NCBI RefSeq assembly: GCF_000143415.4
Contig: NW_003314263.1
Span: 4,219,628 to 4,283,627 of the forward strand
Source: Selaginella moellendorffii
Taxonomy: Eukaryota; Plantae; Lycopodiophyta
Reading direction: 5' to 3'
DNA: 64,000 nucleotides
Below, in pieces: positions 39,993 to 61,424 of the stretch. The first letter of the stretch is position 1; each line of letters starts with the position of its first letter. Under the pieces are notes generated by a model. It was not told the DNA's origin. It was given only the letters and a program-made list of their open reading frames with translations, and did not search any database. The translations under genes and the position numbers were made by a program.

Positions 39993-40660
39993 TCATGAAA
40001 CAGGCGAGAGCCATGAGCAAGAAGGTGACCCGATAGCACCGTGCTCCGGCGTCACCACCTTCAGTTTGACGGACAGAGCAAACATTCCTACGCCTTTAGC
40101 AAGCGTGGGAACGTTTTGCAGGTGGCTGGGTGTGGCATACCTGTCCAGCAGCTTGTCGGACAGTGCACCGGTAGCGACGCCACCCATGAAGTCGAGGATG
40201 GCAACGAACACGCCCGTTTCCGAAGCCGAGTAGCCGAGTGCGAGGCTGATCTGGCAGGGCCGATCCAACGCCGCAGGAGTTTTCGCAACTTGAGCTTAGT
40301 GAGCTACGCAAACCTCCCACAGGCGAGAGTGCGAGAAGGAATGGCTGAGAGCCAGGAGGAATGGAGCGCCACCCAAGTTGTAGAGGAGGCCCGAGAAGCT
40401 ATTGATGGACTCTTGGTCGTAGCCCAGCGACGCTCTCATGTGCTGCAAGAAGAGGCTGAATGTGTTCAAGGATCCGCACGAGAATATCACATGTAGAAGC
40501 TCGCCATGGTTGACATCCATCTCGTCGTCACTGCCATCTTTCCTGTGCTTACCTCGTTAAACGAGAGGGATAACAACAAAATACCTTGCTTGATCAAAGA
40601 CCCATAAAGCTTGGAAGAGTTGGAAAGAGCTCTGTCCGTGAGGAGTCCGATACGCGATCC
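39993..40660 (-). pseudogene. MFS / nodulin-like transporter remnant
   Basis: Broken hydrophobic frames: FSLFLQHMRASLGYDQESIN, QISLALGYSASETGVFVAILDFMGGVATGALSDKLL, GSRIGLLTDR. Confidence 0.45.
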
Positions 40661-40665
40661 AGCTA

Positions 40666-42879
40666 TCACCACTGCTCCATGTATCGATCCAGCTGCATTG
40701 CGGGATCCAGCTCCATCTGTGACGAGAAAGTGTTGTTGTAGTCACTCCGCTGCCAGCCACCACTGTGAGTCGCCACTGCTGTGGAGGTGTCCGATGGTGG
40801 TGCTCGAGAGCTCTCCAGCTGCGGAGTGTAGACGCCGGGATAGTCCTGGCACAGCTGCTTTGCGGCAGCCAAGTCGCCAGTCTTCCACAAGCTCTTGATG
40901 ACGAGCTGGAGCGTGTTGAAGCTGGGATGGAAGTGGAGGCGCTTCATCTCGTCCAGGAACTCGAGAGCGTGCTCCACTTGGTTGTACCTGGTGAGCACGT
41001 CGATCAGGCCGCAGTACGTGAACTGGTTGGCCGTGATCCCGCGCTCCCTCATTTCCTCGTACAGGTCGAAGCACAGCTCGATGTATCCTCCTCGCCCCAG
41101 CCTGACGATCAAAGTGTTGTAAGTGACAACCGAAGGACTGCAGCCGTTTCGCTTCATGTCGAGGAATTCCTCCCAAGCCTCTGCAAACTTCGCAGTCTTG
41201 CCGAAGAGGTCGATCGCAATGTTGTAAGTTATCCCATTCGGTTTGGTTCCCGGGAACGACTTCATCTCCCGGAAGAAGGTGAGAGCCAGCGTCGTTTTCC
41301 CAGCTTTGCTCAGCCGGCTGAGGAGAGAGTTGCACGAAACCGAGCTCGGGTAGATGTTCTTGCCGATGAGCTCCATGTAAAAGGCGTGAGCTCCCTCGAG
41401 ATTGTTCACCATGGCAAAAGTATCCAGCAGCATTCCATACGACTTCACTGTCGGCTGGCAACCGTTTTCCGCGATCTTCCGGAACAAGTTCACGGCTTCG
41501 TCCAGCTCTCCGGCCTTTGCGTGGAGTCCAAACAGGAGATTGAAAATCTCCTCGCCCGGCAAGCATCCTCGTTCTAGCATCTCCAAAAAGAGCCGGGTAG
41601 CACCGGTGACGTTGTGGCACTTGATGTAGCCGTCGATGAGGATGGTATAAGTGAAGAGGTCGATGGTGGACTTGTCCTTCATCTTGGAGAAGACCTTCAT
41701 GGCCTCGTCCATGTTTGCGACGTTGCACAAGCTGCTAATCACCGCGTTGTACACGTAAGAATCTGGAGCGTGTCCAGCAGTCATGAGGCCCTTGTACAGC
41801 ACCGGCACCACCAAGTAGCACTCGGATCGTAGCATCCTGTCAATCACATACTTGTACTCGTTGAAACCCGGAGGTGACGAGGACCTCTCCATCTGTGAAA
41901 ACACCTCCAGCGCGTCCTCAACGTAGCCCCCTTTGAACAGGCTGACGAGGAGTATCTTGGAAGTCTCGACAGTCCTGGGAATGTCGTCGTTCTCCATCTC
42001 TTTGGCAAGCCGGGCCATGTCAAGATACTTGCCGGCTTCTTGGAGGAGCTTGAGCATCATGTTGTAAGTCGCGCTTACGTGCTGGAAGAAAGGCTGGAGC
42101 CCGGCCCAGCGGAAAAACGCGAGGGCGATTCCAGCTTCGCTTGGAGTGCACGACTTGAGCACCTCAAAGACGTGGAAAGGCCGAAGCTGACCACCAAAGC
42201 TGCGAACAACGTCCTCGGCTTCCCAGGTAGCCACGTTCCCTTGCTTGAACAGGCTTCTCATCTCGAAAACCAGGCACTCGTCGGAGGGCGCCGGCTGCCA
42301 GTCCTCGTCCATGTTGCCAGAGATCTCGAAGAGTCGGCAGTCGGGTCTGTGGAACGTTTGCAGCGACGAGTCGGCATCGTCGGACAGCGTCTTTCTTATC
42401 TGGAAACGATCACGAACAACGAGCTCGCTGTCTTCGTCTTCCGATTCCTCGTCCTTCTTCTTTGGAGGAGTGGACGAGTTTGCTGCCGGCACCAGCTGCG
42501 ATTCGCTAGAATCGAAGCCAGCGTAGGCCCTGGAGCTGCTGGGATACTTGTCGAGCTTACTACCCGTGAATGGATAGTTGCTCTCTTCCTCGTCATCCTT
42601 GGCACTCCAAGAAGAGTACCTGGATTCGCGATCGTGGCTACGATGCTCGTAGCGCTCCCCCGCGAACTGAGGCGGCTTCCACACCTTCCTCGAGTCCTGC
42701 GGCACCGTATAGGAGAAATTCCCGGGATCCACAAACCCCTTCTTCCTGTAGTTGCGATCGCTGTAATCCTTCCTCAGGTAGCCTCGGTCGGCGAAATGCC
42801 GCCTAGCGCCCGCGCTGGAGCTGGAGATTCTCGCCGCCGCATCGATCCAGCGCCCGCCCGCCAGGAAGAACGCGCGCAT
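40666..42879 (-). CDS. P-class PPR protein, probably mitochondrial, with an unusual ~200-aa N-terminal extension
   Basis: ALAFFRWAG..HVSATYN followed by about 12 35-aa repeats (e.g. PSVVTYNTLIVRLGRGG). Arg-rich presequence. The exact C-terminus may be spliced. Confidence 0.9.
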   Translation of the reverse strand: MRAFFLAGGRWIDAAARISSSSAGARRHFADRGYLRKDYSDRNYRKKGFVDPGNFSYTVPQDSRKVWKPPQFAGERYEHRSHDRESRYSSWSAKDDEEESNYPFTGSKLDKYPSSSRAYAGFDSSESQLVPAANSSTPPKKKDEESEDEDSELVVRDRFQIRKTLSDDADSSLQTFHRPDCRLFEISGNMDEDWQPAPSDECLVFEMRSLFKQGNVATWEAEDVVRSFGGQLRPFHVFEVLKSCTPSEAGIALAFFRWAGLQPFFQHVSATYNMMLKLLQEAGKYLDMARLAKEMENDDIPRTVETSKILLVSLFKGGYVEDALEVFSQMERSSSPPGFNEYKYVIDRMLRSECYLVVPVLYKGLMTAGHAPDSYVYNAVISSLCNVANMDEAMKVFSKMKDKSTIDLFTYTILIDGYIKCHNVTGATRLFLEMLERGCLPGEEIFNLLFGLHAKAGELDEAVNLFRKIAENGCQPTVKSYGMLLDTFAMVNNLEGAHAFYMELIGKNIYPSSVSCNSLLSRLSKAGKTTLALTFFREMKSFPGTKPNGITYNIAIDLFGKTAKFAEAWEEFLDMKRNGCSPSVVTYNTLIVRLGRGGYIELCFDLYEEMRERGITANQFTYCGLIDVLTRYNQVEHALEFLDEMKRLHFHPSFNTLQLVIKSLWKTGDLAAAKQLCQDYPGVYTPQLESSRAPPSDTSTAVATHSGGWQRSDYNNTFSSQMELDPAMQLDRYMEQW

Positions 42880-42943
42880 CTCAGCATAGCTCTAGCCCTA
42901 GGCCCTCGTTAAACCCTTCCCCCCTTACTAAAGCCAAAACCCT

Positions 42944-42968
42944 CCCTAAACCCTAACCAAACCCTAAC
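42944..42968. promoter_or_regulatory. Telo-box cluster (AAACCCTA) upstream of the PPR gene
   Basis: CCCTAAACCCTAACCAAACCCTAAC about 70 bp from the ATG; telo-boxes are known plant promoter elements. Confidence 0.5.
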
Positions 42969-43084
42969 TAGGGCACTTCTTTACCCTTGGGATTTTTACG
43001 CTGTTACTTCCCATGATAGTGTAAATCCATGGTCAGATTTTAGTGGGCGATTCTCTCTTCTTCCTCCAGGCGATGGATGCTTCG

Positions 43085-43402
43085 TCATTTCTTATGGCTC
43101 CCTCGCACGCCCGGCTTCTCTTTCTCCTTGGCGGACGACTCCACCCCAGCGTGCTGGTTGGCAATCTTCTCCTCCTCGAATGGAAGCTTGGAGTGGCGGG
43201 CGTCGTGGTGGATCTTCATGCTCTTGACATCCGGCGCGGTGGCCTTGCAGATTGGGCACACGAACTTGGCATGGCCGCCCTTGTCCGCCCCCAATCGGTC
43301 CTCGAGCCCCGCCTTTCCGCCTCCTCTGTTGGTGGTGGCCGCGTCCACCTTGGCCGCGATCTCCTTGGCCGTGTGCTTCTTGGGCTTGGCCTTGCCAGTC
43401 AT
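43085..43402 (-). CDS. MBS1: METHYLENE BLUE SENSITIVITY-like small C2H2 zinc-finger protein
   Basis: MTGKAKPKKHTAKEI..TNRGGGKAGL..GGHAKFVCPICK..MKIHHDARH; probable 5' UTR intron about 43420-43608. Confidence 0.88.
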   Translation of the reverse strand: MTGKAKPKKHTAKEIAAKVDAATTNRGGGKAGLEDRLGADKGGHAKFVCPICKATAPDVKSMKIHHDARHSKLPFEEEKIANQHAGVESSAKEKEKPGVRGSHKK

Positions 43403-43954
43403 CCTCGGCTCGATTCCACCTGTGGATTGCCAATCAATCCAATCAAAAGCTTCGCAATCCTCTATCGATCACAGGCCAGGGACACAAGGGATTGATTGAT
43501 AGGACCCAGACAGGCAGGGAGATAGCTCTAGGCATTCCAGGATCAATCAATCAGACCAAGGCGCCGGTGGAGAGGAGGAGAAGCGAGTCCGAATCTATGG
43601 CGCCATACCTGGTGATCGCCAACGCCGCACATACGCGCCCACAGCTCTAGGGCTAGGGCACTGGCGAGCAAATCAAAATCAACCACTCCCATTTCAATCC
43701 AACGGCCAGGAACAAAGCATGTTTACTTTTAAGATTTGTATTAAATTGTTCTTTCCATTGGTGGGCGACTCGATTAAAGCACCTCAAGCAATGCGCTCGC
43801 TGTTAACATGGTGGAATCGCCATTCTCCACTCTTTGTCTAGCACAGCACCTGGTATACTACTACTTACAAATGTGTTCTTCCTTCTTCTTCTTTGTTCTT
43901 CTTCTTCTTCCATCGAGTGTTATATACAAATTCCTCCTCGCAGGAACCAGCCAG

Positions 43955-44889
43955 TCACGCCCCCGTGCTCTCGTGAAACACCATCTCCTGGACAAGCAAA
44001 GAGAAGTTTCATCACTCCTCCATAGCCCATGGATCGATCGAGAGAGACCCGAAAGAAGAAGAGCTTGTCACATACATACCTTGTCACAGACTGGGCAGTG
44101 CTTGCTTCTCTCCATCCATTCCAGGATGCAAGCGAGGTGATAGTGGTGGCCACACTCGGTGTTGATCTTGGGATTCTCGGGTGTATATACTGCAAGGAAA
44201 CAGAAAAAGATCGAATGAAGATCGCAAGAGCTCGAAAGAAGCAAGCAATACCATCGAGACAAGTCGGGCACGCGTCTTCGTCGTCAATGAGCGACAGCAT
44301 CGACTCCGACTTGGTCAGAAGCTTGGACGAGTGCTGCTGCTGGAGCTGCTGCTTGTCGATCGAGTCCGAGTCTTCGGCGTGCTCCGCCGCCGCCGCCGAG
44401 TCGGAGCTCTGCCGGGGGAGCAGCGCCAGCGCCTCGCCGCCGCCGCCGCCACCGCTCTCGCTACTGTAGTGGCTCATCCCAATCTTGTCCCTCCTGGAAA
44501 CCAAGCCATCGCGCGGCAGCCTCACGTATCTGGCATCCACGTCGTAAGGCAGCGGCCGCGGAGGAGCTCTGAAAGTGTCGAGCGAGTCGGAGGAGCGCGG
44601 CGCGGACACCACCACCCCGGACGCCGATGGAGGCGACTGATGCGTCGATGGCAAGCCCGGCCCAATCCTCTCGAACATCGACGCGTACTACAAGAAAGAA
44701 AAGGAAGGAAGGATTTTTCGATCCAAAGGAAGAGCTTTAGAGGAGAGATCTTCTTGTTTCACTCACCCAGAAGAGGAGCCATCTCATGCAGCCTTGGAGG
44801 CAAGCACAGCGCTGGTAGAGCGTGCCATTGGGGTAGGAGACGAGCTCCTCCACATTCTCTGGAACCGGGCAGCAGCACAAGCTCCCCAT
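43955..44889 (-). CDS. RING-H2 E3 ubiquitin ligase with N-terminal MGxxCCC lipidation motif (RHB1A-like)
   Basis: MGSLCCCP...; DTFRAPPRPLPYD; CPTCLD|VYTPENPKINTECGHHYHLACILEWMERSKHCPVCDK|EMVF; four exons. Confidence 0.9.
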
Positions 44890-45154
44890 GGGAAGATCCA
44901 CAGCCCTAAAAACCTGGAATGGATCGATCGCTCGCCCTTTTTATTTCCGGAATTCCATCCTCCTGCCCTAGCGCCCCTTCCCCCTTGCCTTTCCTTGTAC
45001 TTCTAGCTGTGGATTTATTAATGCCTTCGCTATAAGCGCGGTATCTAAGAGAGATTTACGCTAGCCTCGCGAGCTCCAAGCTTTTGTGTGAATCAAAGGT
45101 TGCGTTTGATCTCGCGAGTATGTTACAGTGAAAGATGCTACACTCCACCGCTAC

Positions 45155-46476
45155 TCAGCCAACCATGAACGCGAAGTCGAGGTTCTTGTCTCCCATTCCA
45201 AAGTACAAGGAGCCATACGCCTTGGTAGACGCGTTGTAGTAGAAGGAGTATCCAGGCCACCAAAGGCTTCGCAGGATCACATCTCCGGTGATGGGAGTCA
45301 TTTGGACGCTCCATGATCCTGGAGGAGAGAGAACACCGGCTTGAGCTTGCGAGAGATCAAAGACGTGAGAGCTTCGTTTACCTGTGATGTCTTTGGAGAG
45401 AAGAGTGTCTTCGTAGCGCTGATAGAGATGACCATAGGAATCGAGCTTCTCTGGGAACTTTACTCCTGCGAGAGAGAAACGCGGCTGTCGAAAACGAGAA
45501 AAGGATTTGAGGATGATCGTGTTACCTGAGAACAGTGTGTTTGGAACGAGCTGTTTCCTGGCGTTTAGGACCAGCGCATTCACTGGCATCACTCCACACT
45601 CCTCGTCAACTGCTCTTATCAAGGCGGAGAGCCTGTCCAGCTGAGAGATCCACAGAACATCACTCGAGAAAAGAACGACTTTGAAAGATCTTACCTCGCC
45701 AAATTCCACAGTCTTCATGTTGGGATCCTTCTTTTTCTTTTTCTTCTTTGCGCCCTCTTCGCCTTCCTCGCCTTCTTCCTCTTCTTCTTGTCCCTCCGGA
45801 TTGTCCGTGGTCACCTCGGCCTCTGCCGGCTTCTCAACTTCCTCCACCTTTGGTGCGTCTGGATTCTCACCCTCTATAGGAGCAGCCGCCTCTGCGAAAA
45901 CACGAACGCTTCCTTGAGAAAAAGAACCAGGAAAAGAAAGAAACGTTCCTTCAGACCTTATGTTCTTGTTGAGGAAGCGAAAGCGAAAGCGAGGGCCGAG
46001 TTTTTACTTGGAGGAGCTGGCGGCGTCGGAGGTGGCGGAGGGACACGAACAAGAGCCTTGTACCTTTGGCTGGGATCGCCTTTAAATCCTCCCTGGATAG
46101 TCTTGCAAATGTCGTAAGCATCATCCGTGAGAGGCTGAAGATCCAACCACTTTGCTCCATCCAAGCTACAAAACCAAAGAAAGGAGAGAGAAATCCAACA
46201 ATCCGATCGAGAAATCGAAACAAACCTGTAGTAGCACTTCACATCGACATTGATACGATCGTCCGAGGTCTGGATCCCATTGCAGCCCTGCGCTACCAGA
46301 TAATCCTTGCCTGTGAGCGTGTAAACTCTCCCCCAAAAGCCCAGGGTGCTCAACCCCGCCTCCTCCTTCTTGATCACCAGCGACGTATCCATCGCCGCCC
46401 GCTGCTCCGTGGGAACCACGAATCCAGACGTCCCCAGCGCGTCCAGCGCTAGGGTGTGATTGTTGAAGAACGCCAT
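45155..46476 (-). CDS. RSPH9: Flagellar radial spoke head protein 9
   Basis: FWGRV...DYLVAQG, FKGDPS, LDRLSALIRAVDEECGVMP, SWS...LRSLWWPGYSFYY..YGSLYFGMGDKNLD. Confidence 0.88.
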
Positions 46477-46556
46477 TCCTTCCTCTAGAGCCCTAATAAC
46501 TAAATCACTGGAGTGAATATTCCACCCTGAAATTTTAGGGCTCCTGGGCAGCAGCG

Positions 46557-47338
46557 ATGCGTGCTCTCCTCCGCGCGTGCTCGTATGGGCGGCATTTGGG
46601 ATCGTCGCAGGCTCTAGCATTCCAGGCGCGATTTCTTGCGGATCGGGGCCTGAATAGGAAGGATTACACGGATCCGGGGTACCAGGCGTCGGGCTACATC
46701 AATCCTAGCTGGTACAGTAGCACGCATGAGGGGCGATTCAAGAATCCCTACCCTAGGGCGCCGCTCTACTGCGGGAACACTATCGACGAAGAGGAGCTGG
46801 CCAAGAAGATGAAGAAGAAGAAGCGCATTGGCGATGCGCGCAAGCAGTATGAGGAATCCAAGGCCAAATCGGGTGAGCCAGAGGCGCGGGTCTATAGATT
46901 TAATCGCGGAGAGAGCGATCGACGTAGCAGTGATAGTGGCGAACCATGGGAGGTGGAGGACGATGATTTGCTTGGGCAGCCGCGAAACAGGGAGTTACCT
47001 CCCAAAGTCTCTGTTTTGAACGAGGATACTCCAGAGCTAGAAATTCTCCAGGAGGAGGAGAAGAAGAAGAAGAAGAAGAAGCCACCCAAAAAAAAGAGGC
47101 TTTTCAAGGGGAGGATCGAGACGGACTATGCGGATTTCAACTATAGTAACAGTGGTTTGGATGAATACACCAACAGGATCAAGGAAAAGGAGGACAACAA
47201 GATCAAGGAACTGGAAGAATTCCTGGCGATGAAGAAAGCTCGAGAGGTAAGTCATATCTTTTGCTTGCAAAGGTTTTTTATTTCTACTTCTTTTCTGTGT
47301 AGAAAAAAACCGAAGGTGATGGAGATCATACCATCTGA
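46557..47338 (+). CDS. Unknown putative mitochondrial protein (ADRG-motif family), exons 46557-47246 and 47303-47338
   Basis: Long ORF; GTAAGT donor and TGTAG acceptor; shares two motifs with the genes starting at 42879, 49971 and 58022. Confidence 0.7.
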
Positions 47339-48289
47339 CCACCAGAATACGCTTGGCCGATTCTCCAGTTAGCAGGGACAACGTCGTATGCCGTCACAGT
47401 TTTTCCAGTCGTGAAGGAGGTGACCATGAAAGAAAGGCTTTGGCCATGGAGCGATTTGAAAACCTGGAATCCAACTCCCCAGTTGCGTGACATTGGTAAC
47501 CAGCCAGTTTTGGATCCTTTAACAGCCATTCTTTTGATGTCGCCAGGCCCTCCAACGTTGCTCACGAAGACAATGAGCCACCAGCGATTGCCTTTGAGCT
47601 CGAACTTGATCCCACCTTTCCTCCGACAAGGCACCCTGCAAGACAAGGTTAGTCTTCGAGCTTGGGACAGTCGATTCACTCCACAGGGCCGCGTACCTTC
47701 TGTAGCGAACAGGAACTATTCCGGCTCTCCAGTAGGCAATCTTCGAGAAGGCAGGCTTGGACATGTCAAAGTGGATTCGCGGGGGATTACACCAGCCACC
47801 ATTGTTGGATGGTTTATACCAGTTTGGCGGACAGAGATTGGTGGCAGTGACGATGGTGGAGCCGGGATAGCAATGCTTGGACTGTGTACAAGATATCTCG
47901 TAGCAGCCTCCACAACCATAGCCGCTGTTGAAGAGGACGGTGCTCAGTGCAGTGGTATCAGTGCCGTATCCTTGCGAGTACAGGTTCCCGTATCCACAAG
48001 CTCCTCCTGGAAGAAAAGACGTGAAGTTTAGCCAAGTTCAAATGGAAGCTAGAACAGGATCATGGTGCTAAACGAAGGAACAAACAAAGCAGGGACGAGG
48101 AGGAGGAGTTCTATCTGGTGACTTGCCCATGGTTTCGAGAGCGTCGTATTCTCCGTAAAAGGTCGCGTGAGCATATCTCCAGAGGCCTCCTTTGTATCTG
48201 GATGGAGTGGAGTAAGAAGAACTATAAACTGCTGCTACTGCGAGTGCTTGGATCGCCAGAAGAATGCTTGCAACCAGCGCTAAGATCAT
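47326..48289 (-). CDS. EXPA: Alpha-expansin (three exons)
   Basis: Signal peptide, AHATFYG..TMG|[54 protein letters not shown]. Confidence 0.95.
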
Positions 48290-48637
48290 CGCAAAATTCC
48301 GGTCTGGGGATGAAACGGCGGTGATCCTCTCTTTGGTTTTGTGACACTTGCGAGCGATGTGCCATGAACGAGGCAGACAACGCACGTAGTTTTTCTAGAG
48401 CAGTACTTGGTCGTACTGCCACGTCGTGTCCACCATGGCGCCATATCGGGCTGTGTTGTCACATCGTGTCCACGTCGGACTATTTGCTAGTGCTGGGATT
48501 CGAACCGCCGCCGCGTGCTGCTACACTGCCACGTCCTTGCCACGTTGGACAGATCCGTGCACGTCATAGTCTCTTTGGGAAGATCAAGCTTGAGAGAAGC
48601 GAGCGATCGATCAGTTCGTCAATCCCGAGAGGAAAAG

Positions 48638-49078
48638 ATGGATTTCGTTCCCAATGCTCCTCGCCTGGTAGGTCCAGCAGGTGATTCCGGGGGATTCTTC
48701 GCAGATCTGTTTGGATCGGCTCCATCGGGCTCTCTGGTGCCCTCGTCTCGCCACGACGCCGTCGCCCACACCGCCGCAGAGCTCAAGCTGTCCTCCTCCT
48801 CCTCCTCCCCCACGGGAGGGCACCAATCCAAGAAATGCTCCATGGTGCCGCACAACAGGCCCGCGATCAGCATCCTCCCCGGCGAATCGATCAAGCTGGA
48901 TCACAATGGCCTGCTGCTGCCGTCGCCAGGATCGCCATCGCACTCGTCGCCTCTCCTTGCCGCGGCTGCCTCGCCCTCGCCCTCGCCCGCCAAGAAGGCT
49001 TCCAGACCTCTGGCCACCGCTGCCGTCGATGCCGATGCTACCAACAAAATCGACGGCGCTGCTCAGCCCCTTGCCTGA
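48638..49078 (+). pseudogene. GC-rich N-terminal gene fragment (Ser/Pro-rich), ending at the duplication breakpoint
   Basis: Coding-like ORF MDFVPNAPRL...AQPLA stops immediately before the duplicated block begins at 49081. Family not recognised. Confidence 0.4.
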
Positions 49079-49371
49079 GAGGTAAGAAAATCTTCCTTTG
49101 CTCTCTCTGGTAATTTCTCCAAAGTTTGTGGTCTCTCGCAGTTTAACTACCTGGATCTGTCGACACTACCTACATACATACGTACACACTACAAGTACCT
49201 TGTACATAGTTTTCTCCTCCAATGCTTGTCTTGTTTGCGCTATAAGCTCTTCTAACTTTCCTGTGTTGCTACAAAAGCTTCGAGCACTGATAGATTCGTT
49301 GGAGCCTTCTTGTGTTCTTTCCATCGCTACAAACGCTCCGAGCATTGATAGATTCGTTCAAGACATCTATA

Positions 49372-49971
49372 TCACTTGTGGAGCTGCCAAAAGAACTTGT
49401 GAGGATCCGAAACAGAAGGAATCGAATGCCGCACACTCACCTTGTCTCGTCCCAGCTTCTTCTTCCTGTCCATCTCCTTTATAGTGTGCTCGTCCAGGCC
49501 GCTTCCCTCGTACTCAAACCCGGTATAGTCCTTGAAAGCTCGGCTCATGAGCATCTTCCTCTTGTTGTCGATCTTTCGCTTGCGCCCGGAGAGATCAAAC
49601 GCCTCGGGGAGCTTTCCCGCAAGCTTTGGAGATCGAGCGAGCTTTCGCTCCTCTCCTCCCTCTTTGGATGCAGCATTGCTGGCGGTGGTACTAATACGCG
49701 CCCTCCTCAGCCTGGCCCTGTAAGCGCGCTCGTCCTCGTCGAAGCCCGAGAAGACTGGCGCGTGGGTGAAGTCGCGGGCCTCCTTGAATCGATGGAGCGC
49801 CGTGCTGCGGAAGCAATTCTCGCTGATGTAGCCCTCCTCCTGGAACCCCCGATCGCTGAAGTCCCTGCGCGTGAATCCCTTGTCAGCGAACCATCGCCGA
49901 GGCAAGTGGAGCGATCGGAGCTGCCTCAACAAGCCCCCCACAGCCGCCTTACCTCCACCTCCTCGCAGCAT
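49372..49971 (-). CDS. Unknown putative mitochondrial protein (ADRG-motif family), intact copy
   Basis: MLRGGG..RRWFADKGFTRRDFSD..; probable 57-nt phase-0 intron (GTGAGT...GGCAG) before the last codons LHK*. Confidence 0.7.
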   Translation of the reverse strand: MLRGGGGKAAVGGLLRQLRSLHLPRRWFADKGFTRRDFSDRGFQEEGYISENCFRSTALHRFKEARDFTHAPVFSGFDEDERAYRARLRRARISTTASNAASKEGGEERKLARSPKLAGKLPEAFDLSGRKRKIDNKRKMLMSRAFKDYTGFEYEGSGLDEHTIKEMDRKKKLGRDKVSVRHSIPSVSDPHKFFWQLHK

Positions 49972-50613
49972 TCTCTCATCATCAGCCCTAAAAGGTCACA
50001 TTGGAGGAATCGATAGCCCTAAATTCTAGGAATATGCTCAGGGTTGGTGGCACTTTCCAACACCTTGACGAAAGTGTTGACGTCGCCCCACAAGCCCAGC
50101 CCACATTGCATGACCAGAATCCACAGGCAAACGCTCAAATCCACCGCCCAGCCCAGCCTCGACAGGGATTTGGAGCCTCCGTGCCACAAGAGACGAAGAG
50201 CGGCTTGATCCCATGAATTTGTTGCGGACATGGGAGAATGAAAAGTGATGAGAGACTATCTTCTTCACTTACCGTGTTCCATCCAAACGCATCTAGGACG
50301 AAAGACTCACGTGGTCCCCGTATCTTGGTCTCCACAGAGACAGACAAGTTTTGAGCGAGAGTGTATCACCTCTTAAGGTATGAGCACTTGGGAGAGGGTC
50401 TCGTGACTCGGTGGCCTCTCGAGTCTTCTCTTTAGAAGTTTCTACATGACTTCAATGGAGCTCGAGAGCATTCGCAATTGGGCTTTCCTTTTCCATGTGG
50501 GATGGAGCTTTGATAGAGGACTTTCACTGACCTTTCAGCGAGAATCAAGGCATGAACTCTTTGACCAGATTTTTTTATAAGGGCCTTCGTCTGAGCGGGA
50601 TGTCGAGATAGAT

Positions 50614-52048
50614 ATGGAGGACCAAGCTCTTGAGGTGGAGGGGCAGAGCCTCGATCAAAATGATCAATCACAAAACAAGCTACAAAGGAGCTCATTCCTA
50701 CATGCAACATTCAACAGTGTCAGTGCCATACTTGGTGAGTGATAAATCGTGATTGACGATATTCTTCTTGATTTGAAATGCTTCAAGCAAGCTGCCTTGA
50801 TTCTTTGCAGGGATTTCTTTCCTCACCACACCCTACGCTCTCGAGCAAGGTGGCTGGCTGGGTTTGAGCATCCTGTTCGCGTTTTCAGTGATATGCTGCT
50901 ATACTGCCTATGTTCTTGGTCGCTGCCTCACCCCAAATGGATCATACAACACAATTGCCGAGACTGCCTTCGGTTCCAGAGCTCGCCTTCCCTTCACCTT
51001 GCTGGTTCAATTCGAGATGATAGCAGTGTTGGTGGGCTACACGATTTCCATGGGTGACAATCTTGCCAGGCTATTCCCTCATGCTACTCTTCGGATCTCA
51101 GCTCTTGAGATTGGCCCTTCCAAGGTGCTGCTTTTCATAGCGTTCCTCGTTGTTCTTCCAACAGTCTGGCTGAGAAACTTGGCATGGATATCGTATCTAT
51201 CTCTATTTGGTATTGTTACGTACATGATCATCACGGTTACGATGATTTATGCCGGAGCTGGATTAGGTATCGGGTTTCACCACTCCGTTCCACACTTGAG
51301 ACCGGAAAACTTGCTCAACATCGCGGGAATCTATGCCTACTGTTTTGCGGCTCACTGTGCTCTTCCTAGTGTTTATACGTCGCTCAAGAATCCCTCCAAC
51401 TATGCTACCATTTTTATCGACTGACATGGAGATGTAAAACTAAACTTCGTACTGGATTTCTAGGTGTTGGTTCTCAGTTTTATGACCTCCACGATGATAT
51501 ACATTGGATTCGCGTTTCTAGGAGGAACCATGTTTGGGGACTATACACTTCCGCAAGTATCTCTAAATATTCCCACACACTTGGTTGCTGCCAAGCTTGT
51601 GCTATGGCTGGTTGTTCTCCTTCCGTTCAGCAAGTATTCGCTATGCCTTGCTCCCATAGCTCTCGATATTGAGAGCAAATTCCCGTGGCCCAATACTTCG
51701 AGATGTTTTGTGGCATCCAGCATGCTTCTCAGGACCGGTTTCATGGCCTTCATTTTTTTGTTGGCTATGGTTTTTCCATACTTCGAAACCATGGTGGCAT
51801 TTATAGACTCTGCCTCGGGCATGCTCGTAGCTGTGATCCTTCCTTCGTTGTTTTACTTGAGAATATATAGAAACGCGATGCCAAAGTGGGAGGCCCGAGT
51901 CAACTATGCCATCTTGGCTGTGGGAACTGCGGTGGGCATGGCTGGAACCATCGCGTCCATCATCAATTTTGTGCACCGCATAAGATCATATCATCATCCA
52001 GGTAACTCGTCATTTGAAGAATCTTCAAATAAAAAGATGACAGAGTGA
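50614..52048 (+). pseudogene. AVT1-like amino acid transporter, damaged copy
   Basis: Near-identical to 59605-60987, but the second-intron donor is lost (TATGCTACCATT vs TATGCAAAG|GTT), FIGS is changed to FIDS, and the original stop is lost. Confidence 0.75.
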
Positions 52049-52838
52049 GTTATATAGCTTATGATGGCATTAATTCTAATTTATTCTACAGAATTCTTGC
52101 AGACTTTCACCTAACATGCTAGATAACCGTAGAGCAGCAAGGAAAGAACATTCAAGAAGCCTTTCAAGATCCTACTCTTTATTTTGTAGGAAATTCAACA
52201 GTTGGCTCTCCGAATTTGCAGCATGCCGGGACTGCATTGCAATGTGTTGGGATTTCTCCTATCCAAGATGTGTGCAAGTATGCACAGATTTTTGAGGATG
52301 TTTAGAAGGTAGTGGATCTACAAGTGATAGACACTGCTTGATTCTTATTATAATGAGGCTTATAACATTAACTTTTGCTAAACAATAGACTATGGCTGGT
52401 TTAGTAAAGGGATGATAAAACATGTATGGTTGTAAAACTCAGTTCTCATGAGATTCTTACAACTTTCTTCTGAAAGTCTTCATGTTTTGCCTTTGTGCTT
52501 CGCAAATCTTCCTCAGCTTGCTTGAGCTATATAAATAGGAACAATGTCTGTCATATGTAAGGTTAAAAACAACAACCTTCAAGTGATGTTCTTGTTAGGA
52601 ATGGAAGGGGCAAAATCCTTGAGGATCAACGCATTAGTTTTGGCAGGGTTGGCAACTACCAATTCCAAATTCCAAATGCTGATACGTTTTATATTTAGAT
52701 GTTACCTGCAAGTCCTTGGCAGCACACTTTTCAAGAGCAGAAGCTTGAGACTTCTAGATGGAGATAGACTATGCCATCAGGACTTTCAAGGAGGGGCTGC
52801 CTGTTTTGTTCCATAGAGATCTGAGCTAAGTCAGCAAA

Positions 52839-54236
52839 ATGAACACAAGAAAAAGACGAGCAATAATAGAACTAGTTTTGAGCATTCCTGAAAGTGTGAA
52901 TAACACGAATGCACCATACATTAACATACCAATAAATCACTATATACAAAAGAGAATGGGGCTCCTAAACACAAATCATGAAGGAAACTGTGAAGAAAAC
53001 TACATAGGGCCAATAGACAAACAATATGTCTATTATAAAGCTTTCCATTTTAATGGAGAAACAAAATCACAATGCTATCATCACGGCCGTGTCCAAATAA
53101 AAAATAGAAACCATTTCCCTGAATTGATCCAGAGGTTGCTAGAAGGTAATTCAAACTAGCAAAATTTCAAAGAACTAATAAGGAACTATAATAGTGCTCT
53201 AGCATTTGCTTCCATGGGAGCAAACATTGAAGAATTTTCGGGTGGCGGACCATACTACTTTAAGATACACAGTCAAGTGTATCACCATATGGGCAGCTTC
53301 AGACCACGAGACGATCAAGAGGCAATGTATTTACAACTCTATATTCTAGATACGGCACAAGCAACAGCAACAAGAATGAGAAATATGCATAACAAAAAAT
53401 GTGACTGGGAACTAATGTAAAGATTAGATGTTCTCTTACGAGAAATCAATCCCTATGCAAAAGCATTCAAGATGTTGCATGAACTTGAGAATGAGATGTC
53501 TCTTTCATTGTCATGTACATCAAGGGAGAGAGCACAACAGATCCTTGAAGATACAATGCACCGTGTTCAAATGAAGTTGCTGCCATTTTTACAAATCCAA
53601 GCGGGAACCCACCATTTGACCATAGTATAGCAGTCTATCCAAAGGAAGAATTAATGCAGGAAATATCAATCATTTCATCATGTTGTGACCCTATTATTTA
53701 CCCAATTCTTTTTCCCAGTGCTCAAACATATAATGCTGCATACGGGACATTCCAATAGCAGAATGATGAGTCATGTTGTAAGCGTACTCAGCATGAGCCA
53801 ACCAGCGTGAAGGTGTATGCATGTAGAAGAGCCTCTAGAGTGTGATTGGTCAAATGATATAAAATACATAGATAACAGCAATACACTTAAATGTTGTAAT
53901 GTCACAATGATGGAGTTTTATCAACACAAATTTGCTATATGGGGCATATGTCACAATGGCATAAGAAGCATATATTTCAACCTTGTGTTGACAACAGGAA
54001 AACTCACACAACAATACATGGTCGATACATACACCAAGATTGAAGGTGGCCGACTAACATGGATAAGAAACCACCAACGTGAGCTACATGCTGAAGCATA
54101 CGGTGGCCTCTTAGATTTCATGAAAAACAGAGCCGAACAGCAAAGGGTACATGCTGGAAAACTAATAATACTTCCATCCTCATTCACTGGAGGCCCACGA
54201 CAGATGAATCAAAACTACCAGGATGCTATGGAATAG
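52839..54236 (+). mobile_element. Helitron Rep/helicase N-terminal remnant
   Basis: NYNSALAFASMGANI..GGGPYYFKIHSQVYH, YLQLYILDT, QQYMVDTYTKIEGGRL, ILPSSFTGGPRQMNQNYQDAM; multiple stops. Confidence 0.9.
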
Positions 54237-55409
54237 AATTCTAATTTATTCTAATAGAATTCTAGTCTATTGTCTAAGCCCTAAACCCTGCAAGATGGAC
54301 CTTTGTAACCTTAAAAGCAATATAGTCACTTCTTTTTAATGCTAAGCCTTCATTTTCATCTTTCAAGAGGTCTGAAAACAGATCATCTGCTTCCAAATAT
54401 AAGCGTCTTCCAGAGCCTTCTTTGATAGAATCATTGCCCCCACCAATGAAAGTTCCCATGTAAGTCAATGCTCAAAGTGCCTAAGAAAAAGATGCCTCGA
54501 GATAAACAAATCACAAATGTTAATGAGCATATCACCTCAAGTGCTAGGTTCTTTCAAATGTTCCCCGGGTTTCCATGCAAAGATCCGCATTGTTCTAGAC
54601 TCTGACCAAAACTGCATAAAAGCTTCACATGCTTCAACATCAGAAATCTAGTCATAGCTCGGAAATACTCACTTGGCAGATCCAGAAGAGCCAAGAACAG
54701 CTGCAAATTTGACAACTGCAAAACTCATAAACTTAGACATTATCTTCTTGAAGCCAATTGTCATGTATGCTTGACTGTGGCAGTGCTTGCCTTTTGTTTG
54801 AAGCATCAGAGAGCTTCAAGAAACTTAATCTCCAATGTGTATGACTGTAATACATTCCAAGCAAGGTTGTCAGTAATCTAGAGAAGAAGAAAAGAGAATA
54901 CAGATGTTTGCTGGGGAGCTAAAAGCATCAAAATAGAAAACTCACCTCCTCAATCACTGCCACTTGGCTCACTATTCTCAACACTGAGAACTTGCCAGTG
55001 GATAGATGGACTCGCTGAGGTTAAGCCTGTGCAAGCCAACCAAGGTAGCTTGGCCAGTGACTCTAGAATGGGATCCAGCTTGTTGTCACTGAGCCATTGC
55101 ACATGAAAATGCATTCAGTTTGGCTACAAACAATATGTGAAAGCTTTCTAGCTCAAACTTAAGAGTGCCATACCATTGTTTGGCATGAAGAACTGGAAGA
55201 AATCAGCTTGACTGAGGAAGACAATGTTCAGTCTGCAGCGAACTTGACAAGATGGTATGTAGTGAGCTGCTTTCATTAGAGGTAGTGCTGAGCTTGGCAT
55301 ATAGCAGCAGAGATAGATTCAAGCAACCTCTTCAAGTGCATTATTGCAATCTCTCAACAAGCTGAATAGCAAAGTAGAGGATCCGTTAGTAGCAAAGAGC
55401 AAGAAAGGA

Positions 55410-55810
55410 AGTCTGGATTACCATGTTAATGTAGGCTATGCCATCAAGACTTTCAGGGAGGAGCTGCCTCTTCTGTTCCACGGAGATCTGAGCTATCAGA
55501 TATACAGGAGAATGAAGTAAACATAGAGTGGCTTATCTTGTTTGGTGCAGAGAGGACATCTCTTTCAGAGATCCTGTAAACTGCTTTCACAAACTTACAA
55601 GTTTATTGTACAGGTGCTCCAGCTGAATGGTAAAATGCTTTTCAAGTCGATCTGGGTGGAAATCTTGAGCGCCTGGCAGCCTTTGGACAGCACTATTGTG
55701 ATCAGATGGTCTGTTCATGATTCCACAAGTGCCATGGGAAGTCAGAGATCTCTTTGACGGCATCTTTGAGTACAAACTGGACAGTAAAGGAAAGATTCAT
55801 ATATAACACA
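55410..55810 (+). pseudogene. DUF2358 / SnoaL-like plant gene fragment (short second copy at 52768-52829)
   Basis: NVGYAIKTFREELPLLFHGDLSYQIY..EDISFRDPVN..KSIWVEILSAWQPLDSTIVIRWSVH..DGIFEYKLDSKGKIH; frameshifted. Confidence 0.65.
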
Positions 55811-56009
55811 AGGACCAATGTAATCATGCAGCGAACCTCATGGTGTGCAGCCGTTCCTAGAAAAATGCATTGAAAAAAACTGATTTACCCTAAAAAAAAC
55901 ATTTCAACCTCAACTGTTTTTTTGCAATGTGTTTTCATCTCCACCATTATTAAACTCGAAAAGAATCTCAATTAAATATGTCGCCCTTGCTCTTTTAAAT
56001 ATAGAAAGA

Positions 56010-56036
56010 CTAGCAAAAGTCCCAGCTACGCTGGGA
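56010..56036 (-). mobile_element. Helitron 3' terminus (hairpin plus CTAG)
   Basis: Minus strand TCCCAGC-GTA-GCTGGGA hairpin, then CTTTTG-CTAG followed by target T. Confidence 0.75.
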
Positions 56037-56984
56037 GCATCATGTTTATTCCTGATGTTTTAGTAATTTCAAAAAGTTGTAATTGTAATTGTAATTTTTA
56101 ACATAATCATTATTATGGCATACAATTAAACATAATATAATATTTATATTGAAAGTTCCTTGTACATAATTTATGCTTAATATATAAATTATTGTTATAT
56201 TATAACATGCTATATTATAATGTATATATAAATTTTTGTTTTTAGTATCATGATTTTTATGATATTAAAATATTATAGAATAAGTTATTAATATCTTAAC
56301 TTTTAATTTATAGTATAATTTGTGTAACCAGAAGCCCATGCATGCATTGTCAAAGTGTGGAATACAAATAGATTTCCTATTCTATCTACATGATCAACAA
56401 GAAATAGATGTGACTCACTTAATGCTAGCTTGTAATAGTGTTGGCTGGATGGTGTCACCCTAATAACTTGGATATGAGCATACATCACTTTTTTCTCCAT
56501 GGCAAGTTGGCACATTGTGGCAGCATTACATCTTGAATTTCTATCAGATCCTCATCACTATTAAGCTTCAAAAAAGCTAATTAGCTCACTACCCTGGCTT
56601 GAATTACCCTAATGCCTGGCTAGATAAAGAAGATATATCTTAGCCCACATATCAATGTAGAGTTCAAATGGCCAGTCCCGCATGTAGAGCTTCCACATTG
56701 GAAACACATCTGCTTTCCATTGAAAAAAAATGCGAAGGAGAAGAACATGATAATGTGTTGAGAGAAAAAATACAAGAAACAACCTTATGTTTCTTTCAGT
56801 TAGATTCACTGTTTGTTTCAGAGTTCAAGTAAAAAAGGTTACTCACGAAAAAAATAGCAGATTGTATAATTTATGATGTTGAAGTGTTCAGAGACACTTT
56901 CATACTTCGCATTTATACATTTTTATAAGTACTTAAATGTATTTTCTAATATAATACCTGCAGTCAAAAAAGTTATATGTGTAT

Positions 56985-57165
56985 TAATACGAAATTATAA
57001 TAGTGCATTAGCATTTGCATCAATAGGTGCAAACATTGAAGAGATTGCAGTAGGTGGCCCTTATTATTTTAAAATACATGGACAGGTTTATCATAATATT
57101 GGTTTATTCACAGTTATATATTTTAGATACTGCTCAAGCAACAGAAATAAATATGGTAAATAAGT
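56985..57165 (+). mobile_element. Second Helitron Rep fragment
   Basis: IRNYNSALAFASIGANIEEIAVGGPYYFKIHGQVYH then LQLYILDTAQA; AT-richer paralogue of 53180-53370. Confidence 0.8.
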
Positions 57166-58021
57166 ATTGAAATAATAAAATCAGTGATATGATTTGTGAT
57201 TTTTCGAGAACATTTGCTTGTGCTTCATCAGCATTTCACTTGACAAGTTCTTGTCAACTCATCCATGATGTGTTGCATTTTATCTAACACTTATTTTGCT
57301 TTTACTTTTGATTGTTGCCTACTTGACGGTTTGTTTGCATGGTTGGTTGTGTAGAATTTATTGTCTTTATCCATCTTCCTCTTGCCACTTTTTATGCTTA
57401 GAAACTTAATACATACATAGGTAGACTTCATGTTTATATTAAGCATTAGTCCTTAATTCTTACCATCACATCTCACCATTGTAGAGTTATCATTCTCCAT
57501 CTCTTAAAAAATTTGGAGAGGTATTTTTTGAATCAACCTAACTTCTTTTGAGCCATCCATCAAAATTCTTATTCAGTTTCTATATAATACTTGTGCTAAC
57601 AGTGCATATACACGTGACTTAGATAGAAAATAAAGAGATAGTTTGAATTCAAGTCTCGGCAATAATGAAGCTCCTACAAAGCACAGAACTCATATGCTCA
57701 CACTTCACACTTAAGCATATCCATCGCCACCTTTTGATCATCTCTCCAAGTCCTTGTGAACTTTACAGGCACTAAGCAGTCACTAAGAAGTGAATGACAT
57801 TCTCTTGATGAACCTATCTGCATCTTGTATTAGTTTAGTTCTCTTGAGAAAGTCTGCCACAGTACGTGCTCGTGTGATAAGTCCACATTATCCACATTCT
57901 CATTATCATCAGGATCATACAAGAGTGGAAGTGCCTGGAAATTTAGAAGCAGAGAAGACATTGTTCAAGTTATTACTTTCTGATCATCCCAATGTAGCCT
58001 TTTAGGGCTGATGACGAGAGA

Positions 58022-58615
58022 ATGCTGCGATGAGGTAAAGCGGCTGTGGGCGGCTTGTTGAGGCGGCTCCGATCGCTCCACTTGCCTCGGCGATGGTTCG
58101 CTGACAAGGGATTCACGCGCAGGGACTTCAGCGATCGGGGGTTCCAGGAGGAGGGCTACATCAGCGAGAATTGCTTCCGCAGCACGGCGCTCCATCGATT
58201 CAAGGAGGCCCGCGACTTCACCCACGCGCCAGTCTTCTCGGGTTTCGACGAGGACGAGCGCGCTTACAGGGCCAGGCTGAGGAGGGCGAGTGTTAGTACC
58301 ACCGCCAGCAGTGCTGCATCCAAATAGGGAGGAGAGCGAAAGCTCGCTCGATCTCCAAAGCTTGCGGGGAAGCTCCCCGAGGCGTTTGATCTCTCCGGCC
58401 GCAAGCGAAAGATCGACAATAAGAGGAAGATGCTCATGAGCCGAGCTTTCAAGGACTATACCGGGTTTGAGTTCGAGGGAAGCGGCCTGGACGAGCACAC
58501 TAGAAAGGAGATGGCGAGGAAGAAAAAGAAGCTGGGACGGGACAAGGTGAGTGTGCGGCATTCGATTCCTTCTCTTTCGGATCCTCACAAGTTCTTTTGG
58601 CAGCTCCACAAGTGA
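58022..58615 (+). pseudogene. ADRG-motif family gene, copy with premature stop
   Basis: Near-identical to 49372-49971, but GAG is changed to TAG at 58325. Confidence 0.8.
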
Positions 58616-58829
58616 TATAGATCTCTTGAACGAATCTATCAATGCTCGGAGCGTTTGTAGCGATGGAAAGAACACAAGAAGGCTCCAACGAATCTATCAG
58701 TGCTCAAAGCTTTTGTAGCAACACAGGAAAGTTAGAAGAGCTTATAGCGCAAACAAGACAAACATTGGAGGAGAAAACTATGTACAAGGTACTTGTAGTG
58801 TGTACGTATGTATGTAGGTAGTGTCGACA

Positions 58830-59528
58830 GATCCAGGTAGTTAAACTGCGAGAGACCACAAACTTTGGAGAAATTCCCAGAGAGAGCAAAGCAAGATTTC
58901 TTACCTGTGGACATCCCGGCTACGTGGGAAGCCATGGAAGAATGCTTTCGAAAGGGGCTGGCCAAGGCAATCGGTGTGAGTAACTTTAGCACGAAAAAGC
59001 TGCACGACTTGCTTCAACATGCAAAGATCACTCCTGCAGTGGATCAGGTAACACCATGATCTTCAAGAAAACTTCTACCAAGTTGTGTTGTCACTCTTCA
59101 AGGTTGAGTTACATCCATTGCGGCAGCAAGAGCAGTTGAGAGACTTGTGCAAGAGAAATTGTGTCCAAGTGATTGCTTGGTCACGGTCTTGGCAAGCCTT
59201 GGGGAAGCAAATCCGTACTAGAGCATCCTGTTATCCAGGAAATCGCTCTAAAGCACCACAAATCTCCTGCTCAGGTACATGGTTTTCTTGATTCCCGTTA
59301 AGTTTCATTCATCCATGCGTACAGGTGATCATACGATGGCTCACGGAAATCCATGTAGCTCCCGTTGTCAAGAGCTACAACTCCCAGAGACTGCTGGAAA
59401 ACATTAATAGCTTCGATTTCAGCTTGGCAGGCGGGGACCATAAACGAATCGAGAGCATCGCACAGGAAAGGATTTTCACTACCAGTCCTTACAAGTCACC
59501 GTTTGAGCTATGGGATGGAGAGATTTGA
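58830..59528 (+). pseudogene. Aldo-keto reductase (AKR4-like), C-terminal half, frameshifted
   Basis: [29 protein letters not shown]|VELHP, KSPAQ|VIIRW, VKSYN..RL.EN, ELWDGEI*; N-terminal catalytic half is missing. Confidence 0.85.
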
Positions 59529-59604
59529 ATGCCATCATAAGCTATATAACGCTGTCATCTTTTTATTTGAAGATTCTTCAAATGAAGAGTTACCTGGATG
59601 ATGA

Positions 59605-60987: not shown

Positions 60988-61424
60988 ATCTATCTCGACA
61001 TCCCGCTCAGACGAAGGCCCTTATAAAAAAATCCCAAAGTCATGGTCAAACGAGAAGCCTTTGTTGAAGAGATAAAGAGTTTATGCCTTGATTCTCGCTG
61101 AAAGGTCAATGAAAGTCCTCTGTCAAAGCTCCATCCCACATGAAAAAGGAAAGCCCAATTGTGAATGCTCTCGAGCTCCATTAAAGTCCTGTAGAAACTT
61201 CAAAAGAGAAGACTCGAGAGGCTGTGCTCCCACAAAGTCATGAGACCCTCCCAAGTGTTTATACCTTCAGAGGTGGTTCAAAACGTGTCTGTCTCTATGG
61301 ACACCAAGATATAGGGACCACATGAGTCTTTCGTCTTAAATGTTAGTCATTTGTTTGTCAGTGACGGCTGAAAATTTTTAACGTTTTTGAACGTAAAGGA
61401 GAGGTCGTTCCGTTTGGATGGAAC

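What the first reader, a model, noticed from the sequence alone, without database searches (positions are those of the whole stretch)
40666..58615. Clustered, unrecognised family of putative mitochondrial proteins sharing a bipartite module, once fused to a PPR array
Three divergent genes plus one recent duplicate share a motif right after an Arg-rich presequence: RRHF-ADRGYLRKDYSDRNYRKKGFV..KPPQFAG (PPR, 42879), ARFL-ADRGLNRKDYTDPGYQASGYI..RAPLYCG (46557), RRWF-ADKGFTRRDFSDRGFQEEGYI..HAPVFSG (49971 and 58022). Consensus: AD[RK]GxxR[KR]D[YF][ST]Dxx[YF]xxxG[YF][IV]. A second motif is also shared: NYPFTGSKLDKY / DFNYSNSGLDEY / GFEYEGSGLDEH. Linkers are unalignable and charged, so the motifs look selected. 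The standalone genes also share a phase-0 intron just before a tiny last exon. Inference: a lineage-specific mitochondrial interaction module, present both PPR-fused and PPR-less, possibly an adaptor or competitor system in RNA processing or translation. I recognise no named domain.
Basis: partly seen in the sequence, partly recalled or inferred. Interest (0 to 1): 0.85.

Follow-up and report, generated by a model that had tools for sequence, protein, structure and literature searches.

The report
Selaginella-only presequence-linked motif gene family
Three expressed genes at one locus of the lycophyte Selaginella moellendorffii, two small disordered proteins and one PPR RNA-binding protein, share a conserved stretch right after a mitochondrial-type import signal; it has no relatives in the databases searched, its function is untested, and several copies are already broken.

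Summary
The window is Selaginella moellendorffii scaffold GL377567.1. The shared N-terminal motif is real. It occurs in PPR gene A (40666-42879, -), small gene B (46557-47338, +), small gene C (49372-49971, -) and copy D (58022-58615, +). Pairwise BLASTP gives 2e-7 to 4e-12. About half of the identical residues use different codons, so the duplications are old and the motif is under selection. The second motif is supported only between B and C; it looks like a degenerate internal repeat of motif 1, which is built of aromatic pentads. RNA contigs from three to four studies show the predicted phase-0 introns of B and C spliced. Pfam, PDB sequences and an exhaustive HMMER scan of 1.84 billion representative proteins find nothing beyond A, B and C. 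Structure models are low-confidence. Each protein starts with an Arg-rich leader ending in the -3R cleavage pattern (RxF/L|AD).

A further copy E is frameshifted. Both C-like copies on the other haplotype have lost motif 1. So the C subfamily is decaying, while A and B are intact in both haplotypes.

Mitochondrial location is inferred, not shown. The adaptor or competitor idea is untested. This is an orphan family of moderate interest.

The parts
40666..42879 (-). Gene A: intronless 737-aa P-class PPR protein (P0005). Residues 1-180 form the family module and about 12 PPR motifs follow.
   Evidence: ORF; PPR_2 2.3e-69 and other PPR models; intact allele P0014 on the other haplotype with pN/pS 0.03 in the PPR part
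42793..42879 (-). A leader, residues 1-29, ending RHF before AD
   Evidence: read from the sequence; fits RX(F/Y/L)|(A/S) from PMC4986872
42658..42792 (-). A motif 1, residues 30-74 (ADRGYLRKDYSDRNYRKKGFV...PPQFAG)
46557..47246 (+). Gene B exon 1 (230 codons); LOC112341673, product P0006 241 aa
46638..46775 (+). B motif 1, residues 28-73
47124..47168 (+). B motif 2, residues 190-204 (DYADFNYSNSGLDEY); best non-self match of the motif-1 matrix
47247..47302 (+). B intron, 56 nt, GT..AG, phase 0
   Evidence: spliced contigs in runs X1, X2 and X7, with a variant acceptor in X3
47303..47338 (+). B last exon, 11 codons plus stop
49441..49971 (-). Gene C exon 1 (177 codons); LOC112341685, product P0001 180 aa
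49744..49887 (-). C motif 1, residues 29-76
49486..49530 (-). C motif 2, residues 148-162 (DYTGFEYEGSGLDEH)
49384..49440 (-). C intron, 57 nt, phase 0 (CT..AC on the + strand)
   Evidence: spliced contigs in X1, X2 and X7
49372..49383 (-). C last exon, LHK plus stop
58022..58615 (+). Copy D: pseudogene of the C type, with in-frame TGA at 58031-58033 and TAG at 58325-58327
   Evidence: public models P0002 and P0004 merge it with the reductase fragment downstream
49088..49955 (.). Left arm of the inverted duplication that carries C; partner arm at 58032-58899, 95-98% identical
58032..58899 (.). Right arm of the inverted duplication, carrying D

Best explanation
This is a taxonomically restricted gene family, so far seen only at this locus of Selaginella moellendorffii and its allelic scaffold.

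Shown:
- Three intact, divergent genes begin with the same layout. A 27-29-residue Arg-rich leader ends in RxF/L. It is followed directly by a conserved segment of about 45 residues, made of aromatic pentads and ending in P-x-[FY]-x-G.
- In B and C a charged, unalignable linker follows, then a weaker second copy of the core (DY.x.x.Y...SGLDE), a Lys-rich tail and a phase-0 intron before a tiny last exon.
- In A the same 180-residue head is fused in frame to a P-class PPR array.
- B and C are transcribed and spliced.
- Motif 1 is conserved while synonymous sites have diverged.
- The proteins have no confident fold.

Inferred:
- The leader is a -3R mitochondrial presequence cut by MPP/ICP55 before AD. 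Motif 1 would then become the mature N terminus.
- Motif 1 acts as a short linear, sticker-type contact element rich in Tyr/Phe and Arg/Lys, rather than as a folded domain. It would bring PPR protein A and the small proteins B and C to the same partner or RNA-protein assembly.
- A arose by fusion of a B/C-like gene with a PPR gene, or B and C arose from a partial copy of A's 5' end.

The C branch is undergoing birth and death inside a segmentally duplicated, Helitron-containing array.
For: - Organism and gene models.
- Homology of motif 1.
- Codon divergence at conserved residues: 7 of 14, 8 of 13 and 5 of 13 identical residues use different codons.
- The allelic nonsynonymous changes in A(1-180) and B all lie outside motifs 1 and 2.
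- Spliced RNA contigs from four studies.
- No Pfam, PDB or Atlas relatives, and only A, B and C among 1.84e9 representatives.
- Low-confidence structure: ESM pLDDT 0.48 for B and AlphaFold2 pLDDT 50 for C.
- Aromatic period of 5: 10 lag-5 pairs, reached in 6 of 20000 shuffles.
- Motif 2 is the best non-self match of the motif-1 matrix in B (8 of 1000 shuffles) and C (86 of 1000).
- RHF|AD, RFL|AD and RWF|AD fit RX(F/Y/L)|(A/S) (PMC4986872).
Against: - There is no localisation predictor or experiment, no protein-level evidence and no partner.
- B and C also carry Lys/Arg clusters that could serve as nuclear signals (KKKKKKKPPKKKR in B, RKRKIDNKRK in C).
- C is intact in one haplotype only, and 4 of 5 C-type copies are broken.
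- Allelic pN/pS for B (0.26) and for A's head (0.41) rests on 3+3 and 3+2 changes, so it is not significant.
- Coverage of other Selaginella species in the searched libraries is unknown.
- The RNA evidence comes from unstranded contigs that merge overlapping genes and near-identical copies.
Confidence: 0.45

Rival explanations
1. Motif 1 is part of an extended import and processing cassette. The three genes inherited one 5' exon. The stretch after the cleavage site is kept because it helps recognition by the import receptors or by MPP/ICP55, or stabilises the new N terminus. It would not be kept to bind a common downstream partner.
For: Motif 1 sits immediately after the predicted cleavage site in all members. 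The only other thing all three share is the leader itself. The rest of each protein is unrelated or disordered.
Against: Conserved sequence for about 45 residues beyond a cleavage site is unusual for presequences; the consensus in PMC4986872 extends only one or two residues past the cut. The core recurs far from the N terminus as motif 2 in B and C, where it cannot act in import.
Confidence: 0.2
2. The free-standing genes are expressed by-products of partial duplication of the PPR gene's 5' end, or of a young orphan, with little or no function. Only A matters, and its head is a tolerated disordered extension.
For: D and E are pseudogenes, and both C-like copies on the other haplotype lack motif 1. 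C lies in a rearranged, Helitron-containing duplication. B transcripts carry a spliced 3'UTR intron 143 nt past the stop, a typical decay trigger. Allelic pN/pS is not significantly below 1. There are no relatives elsewhere.
Against: B and C have kept motif 1, motif 2, the intron position and an open frame, despite near-saturated synonymous divergence from each other and from A. B is intact in both haplotypes, with replacements only outside the motifs. Both are transcribed in several studies.
Confidence: 0.25
3. The module is a very diverged member of a described domain or of a widespread plant family that the searches missed.
For: The profile has only 65 positions built from three sequences. 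Relatives scoring below about 36 bits would be lost in a library of 1.84e9 proteins.
Against: Pfam at E up to 1, a PDB profile search at E up to 10, ESM Atlas features and the exhaustive HMMER scan all gave nothing credible. The three extra hits are repeat proteins matched by short repeated strings.
Confidence: 0.05

Closest known systems
Plant -3R mitochondrial presequences processed by MPP and ICP55 (PMC4986872)
   Same: The leaders are 27-29 residues long, with 4-6 Arg/Lys and 0-1 acidic residues. Arg is at -3, Phe/Leu at -1 and Ala at +1 (RHF|AD, RFL|AD, RWF|AD).
   Different: Position +2 is Asp rather than Ser/Thr. A conserved segment of about 45 residues follows, which ordinary presequences lack. 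Import has not been tested.
P-class pentatricopeptide repeat proteins
   Same: Residues 181-737 of A are a standard PPR array (Pfam PPR_2 2.3e-69). The gene is intronless and under strong purifying selection between haplotypes.
   Different: The 180-residue head is shared with two PPR-less genes next door. It was found in no other PPR protein among 1.84e9 representatives. No close orthologue of the array was found; all hits were at or below 30% identity.
Small organellar partners of PPR proteins (MORF/RIP type), as a functional analogy only
   Same: These are small nuclear-encoded proteins with organellar leaders that exist beside PPR proteins and could act with them.
   Different: There is no sequence similarity and no folded box domain. 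B and C are predicted to be disordered. No interaction is known.
Aromatic sticker and charged spacer low-complexity regions
   Same: Tyr/Phe are evenly spaced every five residues among Arg, Lys, Asp and Gly, and no confident fold is predicted.
   Different: The run is very short (4-5 pentads). It is positionally conserved like a linear motif rather than compositionally conserved. Condensate behaviour is pure conjecture.
Pentapeptide repeat family (A[D/N]LXX, PF00805)
   Same: Period of five, with a hydrophobic or aromatic residue once per unit and D/N/G before it.
   Different: There is no Pfam hit. The inward-facing i-2 position is Arg/Lys/Pro instead of a small residue. About one coil's worth of repeats cannot form the beta-helix.

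Membership tests
P-class PPR protein (gene A) | Tandem 35-residue PPR motifs recognised by the PPR profile models | tested here: met
   PPR_2 2.3e-69 with 9 stretches; PPR 4.8e-50; PPR_1 3.8e-45
P-class PPR protein (gene A) | No E/E+/DYW C-terminal extension | tested here: met
   Only PPR-type models hit; nothing else at E up to 1
-3R mitochondrial presequence | Arg-rich N-terminal leader, poor in acidic residues | tested here: met
   A has 5 Arg and 1 Asp in 29 residues. B has 4 Arg and 0 acidic in 27. C has 5 Arg plus 1 Lys and 0 acidic in 28. Read
-3R mitochondrial presequence | RX(F/Y/L)|(A/S) at the cleavage site | tested here: met
   RHF|A, RFL|A and RWF|A against the motif in PMC4986872
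-3R mitochondrial presequence | Actual import into mitochondria and cleavage | not testable with these tools
   No predictor or experiment was available
Any Pfam or solved-structure family (the shared module) | Significant profile match | tested here: not met
   Pfam: nothing below E 0.06 for B, C or D. PDB profile search: 0 hits at E up to 10
Pentapeptide repeat family | A(D/N)LXX units with a small residue at i-2, in runs long enough for a beta-helix | tested here: not met
   No Pfam hit. The pentads have R/K/P at i-2 and there are only 4-5 units
Functional recent duplicate (copy D) | Open reading frame from the start codon | tested here: not met
   TGA at codon 4 and TAG at 58325-58327

The most novel reading that the evidence does not exclude
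Motif 1 is a Selaginella-born docking peptide at the mature N terminus of mitochondrial proteins. Through it, a P-class PPR protein and two small disordered paralogues bind one partner or RNA granule. The small proteins would then tune, by competition or co-assembly, what the PPR protein does to its RNA target. This would be a young, lineage-specific regulatory layer on organellar RNA metabolism, born by gene fusion.
Probability: 0.15. Interest if true: 0.6.

Novelty: new variant of a known kind. Interest (0 to 1): 0.38.

Why it matters
If the inference holds, this is a compact natural example of how a new short interaction element arises. It would show such an element being kept by selection, copied locally and fused to an RNA-binding PPR scaffold in an early-diverging vascular plant whose organelles have extreme RNA processing.

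The locus also shows birth and death in progress. The two haplotypes of one individual differ in whether a family member is intact.

As it stands, it is an uncharacterised orphan family with no functional evidence.

Practically, it corrects public gene models that merge broken copies with a truncated aldo-keto reductase.

Tried and rejected
- Pfam on all copies: nothing credible.
- PDB sequence profile search at E up to 10: no hits.
- Word-based homologue searches with C and with A(1-140): only S. moellendorffii self hits, plus models that merge D or E with a reductase.
- Exhaustive HMMER on 1.84e9 representatives. Only A, B and C were found, plus three repeat proteins. P0007 carries six 'RKFFADRGYTPTDAEV' repeats. 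P0008 and P0009 are low-complexity. I judged these chance matches amplified by repetition, and they have no Pfam relation.
- ESM Atlas by features and by structure: no usable lead.
- AlphaFold2 of C with the family alignment: pLDDT 50, so no fold search was run.
- Search for orthologues of A's PPR array: only generic P-class hits at or below 30% identity, so no functional transfer is possible.
- The pentapeptide-repeat beta-helix idea was rejected on residue pattern and length.
- Earlier findings of this scan: none relevant.
- Literature search by locus names and by topic: nothing found.
- Reads could be laid only once, on 46400-50100. Transcription of A's head and possible D/E-reductase fusion transcripts were therefore not examined.
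Full report
**Identity of the window.** Protein searches place the window on Selaginella moellendorffii scaffold GL377567.1 (4.46 Mb). The allelic haplotype is GL377609.1, fetched as L002.

**The observation.** The loci are:
- A: an intronless 737-aa ORF at 40666-42879 (-).
- B: 46557-47246 plus 47303-47338 (+), 241 aa, LOC112341673 (P0006).
- C: 49971-49441 plus 49383-49372 (-), 180 aa, LOC112341685 (P0001).
- D: 58022-58615 (+).

*Motif 1.* It is homologous beyond doubt. BLASTP gives A-B 2e-7, A-C 1e-8 and B-C 4e-12. An HMM of the 65 aligned columns finds exactly these four places in a six-frame scan of the window and nothing else above noise.

*Motif 2.* It is significant only between B and C (3e-6). 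A's version gives no HSP and is matched by 597 of 1000 shuffles.

*Introns.* The predicted introns are real. Contigs from runs of four studies skip 47247-47302 (GT..AG) in B and 49384-49440 (CT..AC on +) in C. Both are phase 0 and leave last exons of 11 and 3 codons (for the models). The presence of many spliced joints shows these runs are RNA. The contigs are unstranded and merge overlapping genes and near-identical copies.

**Corrections to the observation.**
- D is not a working duplicate. Relative to C, a 6-nt deletion makes codon 4 a TGA, and a G>T change makes a TAG at 58325-58327.
- A third C-type copy, E, lies just beyond the window (L001 9923-10549). It is split over three frames.
- On the other haplotype the region aligns at 98% from 40344 to 49716 and then breaks. 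Both C-like copies there have lost the segment that encodes the leader and motif 1, without assembly gaps.
- Thus one of five C-type copies is intact. A and B are intact in both haplotypes.
- Public models P0002, P0003 and P0004 join the broken copies to a 5'-truncated aldo-keto reductase downstream.

**Selection.**
- Among identical residues in a 32-residue window spanning motif 1's core (RRHF…NFSY in A), about half use different codons: 7 of 14, 8 of 13 and 5 of 13.
- So the three genes separated long ago and the amino-acid pattern has been held, while the linkers became unalignable.
- Between haplotypes, A's PPR part has pN/pS of about 0.03. A's head has 0.41 (3 replacements, 2 silent) and B has 0.26 (3 and 3). 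No replacement falls in motif 1 or 2, but the counts are too small to test.

**Anatomy of the module.**
- The leaders are Arg-rich and nearly free of acidic residues. They end in RHF, RFL and RWF before Ala-Asp. This fits the -3R pattern RX(F/Y/L)|(A/S) of plant and yeast presequences and the AtICP55 consensus (PMC4986872).
- Cleavage there would put motif 1 at the mature N terminus.
- Motif 1 itself is periodic. It reads ADRGY|LRKDY|SDRNY|RKKGF in A, with the same pentad register in B and C. There are ten aromatic pairs at lag 5, reached by 6 of 20000 shuffles, or 29 of 20000 allowing any lag from 2 to 10. The three sequences are related, so this measures a shared property rather than three independent ones.
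- A scoring matrix made from motif 1 of the other two proteins finds its best non-self match exactly on motif 2 in B (8 of 1000 shuffles) and in C (86 of 1000), in the same register. BLASTP also pairs A's motif 1 with B's motif 2 at E 0.044. The 'bipartite' module is therefore probably one unit and its degenerate repeat.
- Models are of low confidence throughout: ESM pLDDT 0.48 for B and AlphaFold2 pLDDT 50 for C.

**Relatives.**
- Pfam gives only PPR models for A and nothing credible for B, C or D.
- A PDB profile search at E up to 10 is empty.
- Word-based searches find only S. moellendorffii entries.
- An exhaustive HMMER scan of 1.84 billion representatives returns A, B, C and three repeat proteins whose scores come from short repeated strings.
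- Leave-one-out models show that a member as distant as A is from B and C would still reach 38 bits (E about 1e-4) in that library. So the blank is meaningful at that level of conservation.
- I could not establish how well other Selaginella species are represented in the library.
- A's PPR array has no close orthologue among the hits, all at or below 30% identity.
- No paper names these loci.

**Interpretation.** What is shown:
- It is a real, expressed, taxonomically restricted family with a selected N-terminal element.
- One member is fused to a PPR array.
- One branch is decaying inside a rearranged duplication that flanks a Helitron.

What is inferred:
- Mitochondrial import and cleavage before AD.
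- A role of the aromatic-basic pentads as a linear contact element shared by A, B and C.

I rate the docking reading as the most likely mechanism, but at modest confidence. Two rivals remain live. The first is an extended import cassette; the recurrence of the core as motif 2 far from the N terminus argues against it.

**Verdict.** Novelty is that of an undescribed orphan module and an unusual PPR fusion, not a new kind of system. Interest is moderate.

Noticed in passing
window 58865-59600 and L001 10001-14579: Public gene models (P0002, P0003, P0004) join broken C-type copies to a 5'-truncated aldo-keto reductase; Pfam positions start at about 114. C itself carries a short remnant of that reductase exon (PERAKEDFL) downstream at about 49090-49115. 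This suggests the copied unit was C-type gene plus the reductase start.
   Followed up: partly
window 49088-49955 / 58032-58899 and 50414-51989 / 59607-61222: There are two separate inverted duplications (95-99% identical), with different offsets. They carry the C-type gene and an amino-acid transporter gene, and they flank an AT-rich stretch holding a Helitron_like_N ORF at 53817-54233.
   Followed up: partly
window 47482-47546: A GT..AG intron on the + strand is spliced out in contigs of all four runs. It lies in B's 3'UTR, 143 nt past the stop, and inside the last coding exon of the convergent expansin gene (47326-47679, -). This is an antisense overlap and a possible decay signal for B mRNA.
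   Followed up: no
window 48638-49139: A 146-aa ORF on the + strand has no Pfam match. It is annotated on the other haplotype. It has a spliced 3'UTR intron at 49080-49139, and its 3'UTR overlaps the 3' end of C in antisense.
   Followed up: no
L002 12516-13225 and 17314-18051: The other haplotype has two C-like copies in which the leader and motif 1 are deleted. One reads ATG...GGT AAG G then jumps to a fragment of QEEGYISEN, and then to RLRRAS.
   Followed up: yes
window 47303 vs 47306: Alternative acceptors 3 nt apart give the 241-aa and 240-aa isoforms of B. One run's contig uses the downstream acceptor.
   Followed up: no
window 49455-49481 in RNA contigs: Contigs crossing the C intron carry the D/E-type variants (an extra Lys codon, D>A, I>R). 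So transcripts of broken copies, or of an unassembled allele, are also spliced.
   Followed up: partly
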